Source of the DNA: Perkinsus chesapeaki ATCC PRA-425
Taxonomy: Eukaryota > Protista > Perkinsozoa
Assembly (NCBI GenBank): GCA_013115145.1
Contig: JAAPAO010000285.1
Span: 1-43,028, forward strand
Length of the DNA: 43,028 nucleotides
Direction: 5' to 3'
Shown: one piece after another, positions 13,618 through 42,886 of the stretch
Position numbering within the stretch: position 1 is the stretch's first letter
Layout: every line of letters begins with the position of its first letter
Position numbers and translations under genes: made by a program
The notes under the pieces: model-generated
Told to the model about the DNA's origin: nothing
Seen by the model: only the letters and a program-made list of their open reading frames with translations
Database searches by the model: none

Positions 13618-13691
13618 GTTGGATTGTGTCAGGCTTCGCGGGGCGATCAAATGCCTTTACCGCGTAACCTTCATTCGTTCAGCTAACCAAC
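13618..13691 (-). promoter_or_regulatory. Eukaryotic SECIS element, form 2
   Basis: Minus strand reads AUGA-A (core 13674-13671), helix GGUUACGCGG/CCGCGAAGCC (one A.A mismatch, one G.U), unpaired UAAA, apical mini-stem GGC/GCC, 3' UGAC, and lower helix GUUGG/CCAAC. It lies in the 3' UTR of a gene with an in-frame TGA. Confidence 0.85.
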
Positions 13692-13717
13692 ATCAAACGG
13701 TCAAAGGGTCGATGCAT

Positions 13718-15009
13718 CTACCCACTGTTGCTGATGGGCGACCGGGACGCCTCCTCATCATCATTTTCGGGCACCGCTGACTTCAAGCCAGACCCTAGTA
13801 TCGCATCCAGTTCTCCTGCTGTCCTCATCTCTTTCAGTCTTTCAATATTCTCAATGAAATTTCCTCTTAGGAAGATCTGCGGGAAGCTGTTCTGTCCGGT
13901 AAAGGTTGTCAAGGCATTCTCAATTTCAGAGACGCTGGCGAATGTATCGACGTTGATAACCTCCAAGGAGTCGGTTATCTAATGAACCCTCGACCACTTT
14001 ACCATAATAAGCGCTTACCATGTTAAGTTCAGCCACGGCAAGCTTGCATTGGGCAGAGCAAGACCAAGCGAAACATACAATCGCTGCAGTACCGTTGATC
14101 TTCCGATTTACGTATTGCATCGCCTGAATTCCGTACCGACACTTCCGTGATCGTATCTATGCCGCCGCCGCCCTACCTCAGCTTCATTGCTTATCTTATC
14201 CTCTTCGCAACCAGCGTCCGACTTCTGAACGATCTCGGTGATCTTTAGCGTCCCATCCAGGCAGGCTTCGACGTCGGCTGCCATGTCAGGTGACTTGAGG
14301 CTCCAAAAGCGGACCACCTTGCCACTAAGAAAGGCAAAGGCATCCTGAGGTCACCCACGCATTTCGCAGCACTCTTGATTAATCAGAAACTTCCCGAAGT
14401 TGAATGGAATCGGTTTCAGCTTCCCCGTCTTGTGGTTGTACAGGCCACAGTGGAACTTGAGATATCTAATAACCGTTTCAGATATGGTCGCCATGCAACT
14501 CATGATAGATACGTGCTACTCAAAAACTGGATGAGCATCTTCTCCATTAACATTGACTGGGCTTGCCAGTAGAAATACCTCCCCCTTAACCCCTTTGTAG
14601 GGCGCCATAACCCTCGTCACGAATTGGTCTATTTTAGTTTGAACTTTCAAGCCTTGTGTCATGAACTGCCTGAAGGAGGAGCGTCTTTGTCCATCTCTTT
14701 CTAGTCATTCCTACCGGCTCGGAAATCCGATTATTTTGAATTTTTTGTCCCCAAATTTGCTGCCGATTTCCCCAAAGACTTTGTAATCGGCAGCGGTCAA
14801 GCCTCATTTCGAGGCGACGTTGGCCACCAGCACCACATGGCCTGAAACGGTGCACTAAACCAACAATAATAAATACGAGCTTCACCTTCGAGCGTCTTGA
14901 AGTCGAGGGTGTCCCCGTCTATAAGCTCACAGGAGAGCTCATAGAAGCTCTTGGCTGTGATGCGAGGCTTGGTGGCACCAAAGCCTAACGCACTGGCAGC
15001 AGTTCCCAT
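13718..15009 (-). CDS. GPX: Selenocysteine glutathione peroxidase fused to a C-terminal glutaredoxin-like domain, about 335 aa, 7 exons
   Basis: Exons 15009-14886, 14841-14715, 14669-14520, 14465-14373, 14324-14177, 14123-14019 and 13978-13718 total 1008 nt. All introns are GT-AG and phase-compatible. Motifs: VVLVANVASK-U(TGA 14806-14804)-GLT, IIGFPSRQFMTQ, VNVNGEDAHPVFEYLK, PFNFGKFLINQDGKVV; then Grx-like IVCFAWSCSAQCK...TGQNSFPQIFLRG...GELDAIL. Confidence 0.9.
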
Positions 15010-40793: not shown

Positions 40794-42886
40794 ATGGAGC
40801 TTTTTCATGGAATAGCCTTTATCCTCACAGCAGGGCTGAAGAATAGAGATAAAGTAAAGCGGCAGGTGGAAGAGAACGGTGGAGTTGTTAAGCCCAGAAG
40901 GACAGTGAGGTCTACCTGGTAGGGTCTGATGCCGATGCTTTCGCTCAGAGCGAGAATGATGTTGTCCTTTTTGATCCTGGTGTCATCAAGGATGCCCGCG
41001 GCTTTAATGTAGGGCGACGATAACTGGACGGTGATGCTGCCTTGAATTCATTGGTTTAGGGTATGGCTTTGGATGTCCGATTTGTCACCAACTCTATCCA
41101 AGCAGGAGTCTGTGAGCGTCCGGCTGACTACACGGTGAGAGCCTTGAGCACAGGATGAGGGAGAATCATTGTTTGGTAGATTACTCCTAGTGATCCGGTG
41201 CCGCTGATCTATAGAGAGCAAGGACGGGGTCGAGCCAACCCTCGGTCAGTGGCTCATCATGTCTACACTGATGAAGACGACATGAACATATTCCGCTTCC
41301 TTGATAAGGAAATACGGATAGCGCGGAGCCAGGGGAGACAGGTCCGGCCAGCTGGGATGAAAGTGTGGCAGAAAGCCGCTCGGGAAGGTGAGCTTGAAGC
41401 TGTCGCTTTCAAGGGTGTAATGTGGTCAGGTGTGGCACCCACCCACACATTGGAAAGTATGCGAACACGGTTCAAGAATTATATTGGCCCAAATATGGAA
41501 GAGTTCGCTCGTCGTCTGGCTGCGGAGAGACAGGCGGAAGCGAGCGCTGGCAGAAGCGCCCCGGCTGCCTCTGAGGGCCCTCACTCGGTAGGGCGGCCTT
41601 TTCAAGAGCGGCGGGCCGCGGCGGGGGCGGTGAGGACGCCTGGTGGGGCTGGTACAGCTGCTACACCATATGATAGTAGAAGACTTAGTGAATCGTTCCG
41701 GTCTCCGAGGGAGGAGGAGCCGGGCAGTCTGTTCGAAAGGGTAGAGGGAAGTAAGATGCGGTCACGGCTATCATCAGCGGGTATAGTGGGGAAGAGGTCA
41801 CGGCAAGGGGGACACCGAAGGGATAGCGCCGATGGCGGCCAGACTGGAGGCAATGGACCACTGGATGAGACTGTCTATGAGGAAGCAGAGGAGCCGTTCG
41901 ATTTGAGTGATACGCTATTTGAGGAAAATGAAGAAGCTACCCAGCGGGGGAGGATGGGCGGCAGCAACCAATGCGATGACTCTACCTCAAGTGGTTACGA
42001 GACGATAGTTTGTGACACTCCTCCGACCTCGGAGGAAGGCGGTAAGGCTCGAAAGCGTGCAAGAACGGGCGAAGCTGGTGATGCTTCAATGGTGACGGCC
42101 AGGGAGGGCAAATCAATTCATGGGCGGCAGCAGCCGGGGGAGAGGATATCAATTCATGGGCGGCAGCAGCCTGGGGAGGGCAAATCAATTCATGGGCGGC
42201 AGCAGCCGGGGGAGGGGATATCAATTCATGGGCGGCAGCAGCCTGGGGAGAGGATATCAATTCATGGGCGGCAGCAGCCTGGGGAGAGGATATCAATTCA
42301 TGGGCGGCAGCAGCCTGGGGAGGGCACGTCGTCGTGTGGAAATCGCAGTGGCAACTACTATGGCGGGGCAGACTCTATGATCCCACCTGACCTCATCCCG
42401 GACAATAGATCGAGCTTTACTTCATCATCGTCAAGCAGCTCACCAAGGTCGGCGGAGCGACGGCAAGAGACCGCTGTTTTCGTAGCACAATCAAGGCGAC
42501 TGATGCGGTGGGTTGAGGCGATGGAAAGGAAGTTTAATTTCGAGGGGCAATGGGTGGCCGACATTCTGAGATGGGAAGGAGGCGCCGCATCGAAGGCAGT
42601 GGCGGTAGCCGAACAGCTTAGGGAGATGACTGATGAGCTACATGTGCCTTGCTCGATTGTTATGAAAGTGTACCTAAGAACAGGGAATGTTGCTCGCACA
42701 CAGGAGAAGGTTGAAGGTGTGATGGAGCTCCATAAGCGGACAGGCGTACGATATGATTGGATAGTATTATGGATGGAAATGTTAGATTATGATGTAGCTA
42801 AGACAGAGAAGTATTTGGGTAACCGATACGGCTGCAACGACGACCATTCCCACCACCACCACCACCGTCGACGAGAACGGCGATAA
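40794..42886 (+). CDS. RAP1: RAP1/TERF2IP-like protein (BRCT - Myb-like - C-terminal helical repeats), about 650 aa, 4 exons
   Basis: Exons 40794-40904, 40949-41008, 41060-41134 and 41180-42886, all phase 0 GT-AG. BRCT-like: LFHGIAFIL..KVKRQVEENGGVV..VVLFDP..DVRFVTNSIQAG..ADYTI. Myb-like: YTDEDDMNIFRFL..GMKVWQKA..THTLESMRTRFKNYI. C-terminal MERKFNF... Confidence 0.7.
42104..42325 (+). repeat. Coding minisatellite, 6 x 36 nt (E[G/R][K/I]SIHGRQQPG)
   Basis: tcaattcatgggcggcagcagcc recurs at exact 36-nt spacing, with variation only at a few positions. Confidence 0.95.

What the first reader, a model, noticed from the sequence alone, without database searches (positions are those of the whole stretch)
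40794..42886. Candidate shelterin RAP1 orthologue in an alveolate
Three small upstream exons missed by the ORF track supply a BRCT-like domain. With a Rap1-type Myb domain and a C-terminal helical unit recalling human RAP1 RCT (MEKFNL...), this gives the BRCT-Myb-RCT order of yeast, vertebrate and trypanosome RAP1. To my knowledge clear RAP1 orthologues are not described in apicomplexans, so this could inform telomere evolution in Myzozoa.
Basis: partly seen in the sequence, partly recalled or inferred. Interest (0 to 1): 0.7.

Follow-up and report, generated by a model that had tools for sequence, protein, structure and literature searches.

The report
RAP1-family telomere protein gene in Perkinsus
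This oyster-parasite relative (Perkinsus chesapeaki) has a five-exon gene whose front half is clearly of the RAP1 chromosome-end protein family. It extends that known family to a new branch of life, but its tail could not be shown to be the family's usual partner-binding domain.

Summary
At 40794-42886 (+) lies a five-exon gene of Perkinsus chesapeaki, GenBank FOL47_005087 / KAF4664541.1. Perkinsus is a perkinsid, not an apicomplexan.

**BRCT and Myb: supported.**
- Three small exons plus the start of exon 4 encode an N-terminal BRCT domain. A Rap1-type Myb domain follows.
- Pfam Myb_Rap1 scores 30-34 bits (cut-off 27.1). BRCT_2 scores 26.7 bits (cut-off 27.3).
- hhalign against non-Perkinsus RAP1-like proteins gives 99.5% probability over 161 columns spanning both domains.
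- The AlphaFold model has pLDDT 84. It matches BRCT folds, and its Myb matches telomeric Rap1 and TEBP-2 Mybs.

**RCT: not shown.**
- There is no Pfam Rap1_C match.
- A small RCT profile finds human RAP1 RCT at E 3e-4, but scores only 1.6% (hhalign) and 3 bits on this tail.
- No homologue of the tail was found, and it could not be folded (pLDDT 43).

**Gene model.** The public model (452 aa) removes a frame-shifting "intron" inside a 36-nt tandem repeat and so loses the tail. Codon statistics favour an uninterrupted 636-aa product. No RNA data exist to confirm any splice.

**Novelty.** UniProt and Pfam already flag BRCT and Rap1-Myb automatically, and a full BRCT-Myb-RCT RAP1 exists in the oomycete Phytophthora. 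This is a new member of a known kind. Telomere function is inferred only.

The parts
40794..40904 (+). Exon 1: start codon and the first 37 residues of the BRCT domain (strand 1, helix 1 and the GG-V-V strand 2).
   Evidence: The in-frame stop lies just upstream. The BRCT starts at residue 3, as in Penicillium and Phytophthora RAP1.
40905..40948 (+). Intron 1, 44 nt, GTGAGG..CAG, frame-shifting.
   Evidence: This junction scores 36.8 bits against the RAP1-BRCT HMM, within 0.1 bit of the top score among 21 in-frame alternatives.
40949..41008 (+). Exon 2: BRCT residues 38-57.
41009..41059 (+). Intron 2, 51 nt, GTAGGG..TAG. It contains an in-frame stop.
41060..41134 (+). Exon 3: BRCT residues 58-82 (strand 4 and the last helix).
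41135..41179 (+). Intron 3, 45 nt, GTGAGA..TAG. It contains in-frame stops.
41180..41387 (+). Exon 4: the linker and Myb helices 1-2. The Myb starts at about 41264.
41388..41429 (+). Intron 4, 42 nt, in frame and stop-free, GTGAGC..CAG, inside the Myb domain.
   Evidence: Removing it lifts Myb_Rap1 from 19.9 to 30-33.7 bits. An intron sits at the same place in P. olseni homologues, with stop codons inside it in two of the four loci, L002 and L011. The P. chesapeaki paralogue has one there too.
41430..42886 (+). Exon 5 in the preferred, uninterrupted model. It holds Myb helix 3 (to about 41527), a roughly 310-residue low-complexity region, the tandem repeats, the C-terminal helical domain, a His/Arg tail and the TAA stop.
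41264..41527 (+). Rap1-type Myb domain, protein residues 111-184, interrupted by intron 4.
42044..42064 (+). A basic K-A-R-K-R-A-R patch, a candidate nuclear localisation signal.
   Evidence: Read from the sequence. Its function is inferred.
42078..42133 (+). The disputed 'intron 5' of the GenBank model, 56 nt and frame-shifting. Probably not an intron.
   Evidence: With it removed, the frame closes at 42380 and the coding C-terminal domain is lost.
42112..42322 (+). A 36-nt tandem repeat, 5.9 copies at 94% identity. It encodes six 12-residue S-I-H-G-R-Q-Q-P-G-E-x-x units and is open in all three frames.
42467..42829 (+). C-terminal helical domain of about 121 residues (protein 498-618). It stands where RAP1 proteins have their RCT, but homology is unproven.
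   Evidence: Codon log-likelihood is +17.5 in the ORF frame against -41 and -37 in the others, with 0 against 11 and 13 stops. Hydrophobic content is 39%. At least five helices appear in a low-confidence model. No family match was found.

Best explanation
The gene encodes a RAP1-family protein of Perkinsus chesapeaki, most likely 636 residues long.

**Shown.** It has an N-terminal BRCT domain followed by one Rap1-type Myb domain. These are collinear with, and homologous to, the BRCT-Myb module of fungal, oomycete and human RAP1.

**Inferred.**
- By analogy with RAP1 of yeasts, vertebrates and trypanosomes, the protein enters the nucleus, possibly by way of the basic KARKRAR patch.
- It probably sits on duplex telomeric chromatin. 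The predicted Perkinsus repeat is TTTCGGG.
- There it would act as an adaptor for end protection and subtelomeric silencing.
- Recruitment could be direct, through its mildly basic Myb, or through a still unknown duplex-repeat-binding partner held by the C-terminal helical domain. The Myb's closest structural matches are the DNA-bound Mybs of C. elegans TEBP-2 and yeast Rap1.
- The C-terminal domain stands where the RCT stands in other RAP1s. I put about even odds on it being a diverged RCT.

**Gene model.** The public gene model is probably wrong at its 3' end. It splices out 56 nt inside a tandem repeat, shifts frame and drops this domain.
For: **Family membership of the BRCT-Myb module.**
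- Pfam Myb_Rap1 scores 30.0 bits on the whole protein and 33.7 bits on the fragment (cut-off 27.1). No other Myb family is listed at E up to 10.
- BRCT_2 scores 26.7 bits over profile positions 2-85 of 86, ahead of generic BRCT at 19.9. The same ranking is seen in bona fide RAP1s from Penicillium and Phytophthora.
- An exhaustive phmmer search of 1.84 billion proteins aligns both domains in one stretch to Penicillium RAP1 (P0008, which carries BRCT_2, Myb_Rap1 and Rap1_C) and to Phytophthora RAP1.
- hhalign against 12 non-Perkinsus sequences gives 99.5% probability, E 2e-22, over 161 columns.
- The family profile finds human RAP1 8rd4_D at E 9e-21, then 1fex and yeast Rap1.

**Structure.**
- The AF2 model has pLDDT 84.

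**Exon structure.** See, with the conserved Myb intron.

**The C-terminal domain belongs to the gene.** It uses the same coding frame as upstream exon 5, with a positive codon log-likelihood and no stop codon.
Against: - No RNA-seq run holds this locus, so no splice junction is confirmed.
- BRCT_2 is 0.6 bit under Pfam's cut-off.
- RCT was not detected. Pfam Rap1_C is not listed even at E 10. hhalign against an RCT profile that does find human RCT gives 1.6% probability. The HMM score is 3.1 bits, seventh of 501 against shuffles. The conserved W-x-x-D-D motif of RCTs is absent.
- No orthologue with the same architecture was found in P. olseni or any other alveolate.
- No telomeric repeats and no TRFH protein were found in the draft assembly, though both searches are uninformative.
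- Telomere association is pure inference.
Confidence: 0.65

Rival explanations
1. The protein is a RAP1-family descendant that no longer works at telomeres. It would be a BRCT-Myb chromatin or transcription factor, or a DNA-damage adaptor, whose lineage-specific C-terminal domain binds non-telomeric partners.
For: - The C-terminal domain has no detectable RCT features and no homologues.
- Yeast and mammalian RAP1 also have non-telomeric transcriptional roles (abstracts listed).
- Rap1-type Mybs occur in other contexts in Perkinsus: a second paralogue, and P. olseni copies next to or fused with an OB-fold gene.
Against: - The BRCT-Myb_Rap1 combination was found here only in RAP1-like proteins.
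- The nearest structural matches of the Myb are telomeric proteins.
Confidence: 0.2
2. The GenBank model is right: a 452-residue BRCT-Myb protein ending at 42380. The helical domain at 42380-42886 would then be a separate small gene or an alternative isoform.
For: - The proposed intron 42078-42133 has GT..AG ends and a length (56 nt) close to the other four.
- The repeat region is open in all three frames, so ORF continuity across it is weak evidence.
- An ATG lies at 42377.
Against: - The downstream coding frame is the same as the upstream one, which a 56-nt frame-shifting intron would not give.
- In the GenBank frame the reading stops exactly where the well-coding domain begins, which leaves no intergenic space.
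- The product of the shifted frame is a low-complexity A/W/G repeat.
Confidence: 0.15
3. The RAP1 resemblance is chance or convergent. On this reading an ordinary BRCT protein happens to lie next to a generic SANT/Myb domain.
For: By fold alone the BRCT matches MDC1, ECT2 and XRCC1 slightly better than it matches human RAP1 BRCT.
Against: - hhalign gives E 2e-22 over both domains.
- Myb_Rap1 scores above Pfam's curated cut-off, with no generic Myb hit.
- Fold rank among BRCTs does not discriminate subfamilies.
Confidence: 0.03

Closest known systems
Fungal RAP1 (for example Penicillium oxalicum EPS33933.1, P0008) and oomycete RAP1 (Phytophthora capsici, P0020)
   Same: - An N-terminal BRCT starts at residue 3-4.
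- A short linker follows, then a single Rap1-type Myb.
- Next comes a long acidic or disordered region, then a C-terminal helical domain.
- BRCT and Myb align in one collinear stretch.
   Different: Those proteins have a recognisable Rap1_C (86 and 21.8 bits) with the W-x-x-D-D motif. The Perkinsus tail has neither. Perkinsus also carries a 6 x 12-residue tandem repeat and a His/Arg tail.
Human RAP1 / TERF2IP (PDB 8rd4, 1fex, 7oz0, 3k6g)
   Different: Human RAP1 is recruited only through TRF2 binding to its RCT. No TRF2-like partner and no RCT could be shown here.
Trypanosoma brucei RAP1
   Same: It is a protist RAP1 with BRCT, Myb and a poorly conserved C-terminal region. It shows that the family reaches far beyond opisthokonts (PMC7045384 and PMC10813129, listed).
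   Different: TbRAP1 has an extra MybLike domain, and it binds TbTRF through its Myb (PMC8653790). No second Myb is detectable in Perkinsus.
C. elegans TEBP-1/2 (DTN-1/2) Myb-containing domains
   Different: TEBP proteins have three tandem Myb-containing domains and no BRCT. This is a fold-level resemblance only.

Membership tests
RAP1 (TERF2IP / Rap1p) family | N-terminal BRCT domain of the RAP1 type | tested here: met
   - Pfam BRCT_2 scores 26.7 bits over profile positions 2-85 of 86. That is 0.6 bit below the cut-off, and it is the same Pfam family that matches the BRCT of bona fide RAP1s.
- It scores 36.8 bits against an HMM of four non-Perkinsus RAP1 BRCTs.
RAP1 (TERF2IP / Rap1p) family | Rap1-type Myb domain (Pfam PF08914) | tested here: met
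   It scores 30.0 to 33.7 bits against a cut-off of 27.1, and no other Myb family is listed. The profile hits 1fex and yeast Rap1.
RAP1 (TERF2IP / Rap1p) family | BRCT then Myb in one polypeptide, collinear with known RAP1 | tested here: met
   hhalign gives 99.5%, E 2e-22, over 161 columns spanning both domains. phmmer gives single-stretch alignments to P0008 and P0015. This depends on splice junctions that have no RNA support.
RAP1 (TERF2IP / Rap1p) family | C-terminal RCT domain (Pfam Rap1_C, a six-helix bundle that binds the partner) | tested here: inconclusive
   - Sequence tests were negative. Rap1_C is not listed at E 10. hhalign against the RCT profile gives 1.6%. The HMM gives 3.1 bits, shuffle p about 0.014.
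- The same RCT profile finds human 3k6g at E 3e-4.
- The fold test was impossible: single-sequence AF2 gave pLDDT 43, and no homologues exist to build an alignment.
- RCT is known to be poorly conserved in sequence (PMC8653790).
RAP1 (TERF2IP / Rap1p) family | Association with telomeric chromatin | not testable with these tools
   The draft assembly holds no TTAGGG, TTTAGGG or TTTCGGG arrays of four or more units. This needs ChIP or imaging.
RAP1 (TERF2IP / Rap1p) family | Recruitment by a TRF/Taz1-type duplex-repeat binder | not testable with these tools
   The six-frame search for the TRFH domain (PF08558) found nothing in the genome. Its controls did not ring either, so the result is uninformative.

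The most novel reading that the evidence does not exclude
The C-terminal domain is not an RCT. It would be a new, perkinsid-specific partner-binding module. Perkinsus would then have rebuilt its duplex-telomere complex, on the unusual TTTCGGG repeat, around Rap1-type Myb domains used in several architectures: BRCT-Myb plus the new domain here, a Myb-only paralogue, and an RPA-like OB-Myb fusion in P. olseni. Recruitment would be independent of a TRF/Taz1-type protein.
Probability: 0.25. Interest if true: 0.6.

Novelty: new member of a known kind. Interest (0 to 1): 0.4.

Why it matters
RAP1 is described as the most conserved shelterin subunit (PMC8653790). Plasmodium, by contrast, is said to lack discernible homologues of almost all model-organism telomere-binding factors (PMC8902816).

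A clear BRCT-Myb RAP1-family gene in a perkinsid, together with a complete RAP1 in an oomycete, points to three things:
- RAP1 was probably present in the SAR ancestor and very likely in early eukaryotes.
- Its apparent absence from Plasmodium, the one apicomplexan for which the literature read here speaks, would then be loss or extreme divergence.
- It gives an entry point, by tagging and pull-down, into the unknown telomere complex of Myzozoa.

Practically, the public gene model appears truncated, and a corrected 636-residue model is proposed.

Tried and rejected
- **RNA evidence.** No run holds the locus. Two small same-species runs laid nothing on it.
- **Word-indexed homologue searches.** The long ORF, its C-terminal region and the BRCT-Myb part each found only the protein itself.
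- **Metagenome scan with the C-terminal domain.** It gave 125 pattern hits, none confirmed.
- **ESM Atlas look-alikes of the tail.** There was nothing usable. The best score was 0.79, to a UBA-like cluster, which is below the level of shuffled controls.
- **Single-sequence AlphaFold of the tail.** pLDDT was 43, so no fold search was attempted on it.
- **PDB sequence search with the tail.** It returned only His-tag artefacts.
- **Three 35-residue UBA-like internal repeats in the tail.** This was my own idea, and it is not significant (shuffle p 0.17).
- **Alternative exon 1-2 junction.** My first reading kept a 'VYLVGSD' strand, which would need a 23-nt intron. It scores lower (34.9 against 36.8 bits), so I dropped it.
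- **Pfam six-frame searches of the genome.** PF08914, PF11626 and PF08558 found nothing. PF08914 missed even this gene, because the intron splits the domain, and the controls did not ring. These searches are uninformative.
- **Telomere-repeat patterns in the assembly.** None were found.
- **P. olseni loci.** Only the Myb is conserved there. No BRCT or tail was found, so they could not supply an alignment for the tail.
- **Complex prediction.** Not used, because I have no candidate partner and make no binding claim.

Full report
**Identity of the locus.**
The window is a contig of Perkinsus chesapeaki. The only database protein matching the long ORF is KAF4664541.1, locus tag FOL47_005087 (P0001, 452 aa). 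UniRef names it 'BRCT domain-containing protein', and Pfam PF08914 (Rap1 Myb) is precomputed for it. Perkinsus is a perkinsid, sister to dinoflagellates within Myzozoa. It is not an apicomplexan.

**Gene structure.**
The ATG at 40794 follows an in-frame stop. A script that required GT..AG borders and an exact match to P0001 recovered these exons and introns:
- Exons: 40794-40904, 40949-41008, 41060-41134, 41180-41387, and an exon starting at 41430.
- Introns: 44, 51, 45 and 42 nt, all starting GTGAG or GTAGG and ending CAG or TAG.

For intron 1, I enumerated all 21 in-frame, stop-free GT..AG alternatives. I scored each against an HMM built from four non-Perkinsus RAP1 BRCTs. The annotated junction scores 36.8 bits, within 0.1 bit of the top. 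A 23-nt alternative that I had first favoured by eye scores lower, at 34.9 bits.

The fourth intron lies inside the Myb domain. It is in frame and stop-free, which is why the ORF list shows one 562-codon ORF.
- Removing it raises the Pfam Myb_Rap1 score from 19.9 bits (E 0.001) to 30.0 on the whole protein and 33.7 on the fragment. The cut-off is 27.1.
- The Myb match is interrupted at the same position in four P. olseni loci. The intervening stretch holds stop codons in two of them, L002 and L011.
- The second P. chesapeaki copy has an intron there too.

No RNA-seq run holds this locus, and two small same-species runs laid nothing on it. All junctions therefore rest on homology and signal logic.

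**The 3' end.**
GenBank removes a fifth intron, 42078-42133 (56 nt). It lies inside a 36-nt x 5.9 tandem repeat. Removing it shifts the frame and ends the protein at 42380 after a low-complexity A/W/G stretch.

I trained a codon log-likelihood on six long ORFs of the window:
- Region 42380-42883 codes in the same frame as 41432-42077. The score is +17.5, against -40.7 and -36.5 in the other two frames, with 0 stops against 11 and 13.
- The repeat itself is open and uninformative in all three frames.

A frame-shifting intron would not leave the downstream coding frame equal to the upstream one. I therefore prefer an uninterrupted exon 5 (41430-42886) and a 636-residue product. I leave about 15% for the GenBank reading or a separate downstream gene.

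**BRCT and Myb.**
Pfam results on the spliced protein:
- BRCT_2 scores 26.7 bits over profile positions 2-85 of 86 (cut-off 27.3).
- Generic BRCT scores 19.9 bits.
- Myb_Rap1 is above its cut-off.
- No generic Myb family is listed at E up to 10.

The exhaustive phmmer search of 1.84 billion representatives with residues 1-185 gave 15 hits at E 0.001 or better. They include:
- Penicillium oxalicum RAP1 (P0008). It carries Myb_Rap1 at 90 bits, Rap1_C at 86 bits and BRCT_2 at 35 bits, and it aligns over query residues 3-167.
- A Phytophthora capsici protein (P0015, with its fuller EukProt model P0020), aligned over 4-170.

Profile-level and structural results:
- An alignment of 12 non-Perkinsus hits compared with the Perkinsus N-terminus by hhalign gives 99.5% probability, E 2e-22, over 161 columns covering both domains.
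- The family profile finds human RAP1 (8rd4_D, E 9e-21, both domains), the human RAP1 Myb 1fex (4e-14), yeast Rap1 DNA-binding domains, and the yeast Rap1 BRCT 2l42 (0.011).
- AlphaFold2 with this alignment gives pLDDT 84. It shows a canonical BRCT (four strands plus helices) and a three-helix Myb at pLDDT 95-98.

**The C-terminal domain.**
Residues 498-618 of the 636-aa model (about 42467-42829) are 39% hydrophobic. Residues 185-497 are low-complexity, with 14% hydrophobic residues and 70% S/G/P/A/Q/E/R. A low-confidence model shows at least five helices. This is a real folded-looking unit in the position of the RCT, but I could not show that it is one.
- Pfam Rap1_C is not listed even at E 10.
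- phmmer against PDB gives only His-tag artefacts.
- BLASTP against the Penicillium RCT gives nothing.
- I built a three-sequence RCT profile from Penicillium, Phytophthora and one metagenomic protein. It detects human RAP1 RCT 3k6g at E 2.8e-4, so it has cross-kingdom power.
- The same profile against the Perkinsus tail gives hhalign probability 1.6%. With filters off, HMMER gives 3.1 bits, ranking seventh of 501 against shuffles, p about 0.014.
- That weak alignment falls on residues 107-148 of the 168-residue piece.
- The W-x-x-D-D motif shared by the fungal, oomycete and human RCTs is absent.
- No homologue of the tail was found by word search, Atlas or metagenome scan.

RCT is known to be weakly conserved in sequence but to share a six-helix bundle (PMC8653790). 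I call this feature inconclusive, at about even odds, mostly on positional grounds.

**Context in Perkinsus and beyond.**
- The P. chesapeaki genome has a second Rap1-type Myb at C3141:17554-17685(-), near a contig end.
- In P. olseni, the nearest homologues are 42-53% identical in the Myb. P0003's best match in P. chesapeaki is this gene.
- Their Myb exons have no ATG of their own and lie about 100 nt downstream of an RPA-like OB-fold gene. Two of three public models splice them onto that gene. No BRCT or tail was found nearby, even on a 451-kb contig.
- Orthology across Perkinsus species is therefore unresolved.
- Phytophthora capsici P0020 is a full BRCT-Myb-RCT protein (Rap1_C 21.8 bits). 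RAP1 therefore exists elsewhere in the SAR supergroup.

Literature searches found no paper describing RAP1 in perkinsids, dinoflagellates, oomycetes or apicomplexans.
- PMC3622300 predicts TTTCGGG as the P. marinus telomere repeat.
That note is a lead only.
- The draft assembly holds no arrays of TTAGGG, TTTAGGG or TTTCGGG.

**Verdict.**
This is a genuine RAP1-family gene by its BRCT-Myb module, already flagged by automatic annotation. Its C-terminal domain has unproven affinity and appears to be missing from the public model. Telomere function is inferred from family membership. It is a new member of a known kind, of moderate interest for telomere evolution in Myzozoa.

Noticed in passing
L001:3541-3877; L002:1986-2285; L011:12590-13189: In P. 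olseni the Rap1-type Myb exons lie about 100 nt downstream of an RPA-like OB-fold gene (Pfam REPA_OB_2) and have no start codon of their own. Two of three GenBank models (KAF4736738.1, KAF4753731.1) splice the OB fold and the Myb into one protein. If real, an OB-Myb(Rap1) fusion would be an unusual telomere-protein architecture.
   Followed up: partly
G000:C3141:17554-17685 (-) = L009: A second Rap1-type Myb gene in P. chesapeaki. It is 52% identical over the first Myb half, has the intron at the same position, and lies 450 nt from a contig end, so its N-terminus is unknown.
   Followed up: partly
window 42112-42322: A 36-nt tandem repeat (5.9 copies, 94% identity) inside the coding region. 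It is open in all three frames and encodes 12-residue S-I-H-G-R-Q-Q-P-G-E-x-x units. It probably misled the gene predictor and may vary in length between strains.
   Followed up: partly
P0015 / P0020 (Phytophthora capsici): The NCBI model KAG1685980.1 (173 aa) truncates a RAP1 whose EukProt model (346 aa) has BRCT, a Rap1 Myb and a sub-threshold Rap1_C. I found no paper describing an oomycete RAP1.
   Followed up: partly
P0004, P0006, P0007, P0009, P0013 (metagenome and ENA proteins): Unnamed proteins carrying two to four tandem Rap1-type Myb domains. P0007 also has an N-terminal BRCT. The architecture recalls C. elegans TEBP-1/2. Their source organisms are unknown.
   Followed up: no
window 13618-15009: Earlier notes of this scan place a candidate Sec-containing GPx-Grx fusion and a SECIS element elsewhere in this window. 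I did not examine them.
   Followed up: no
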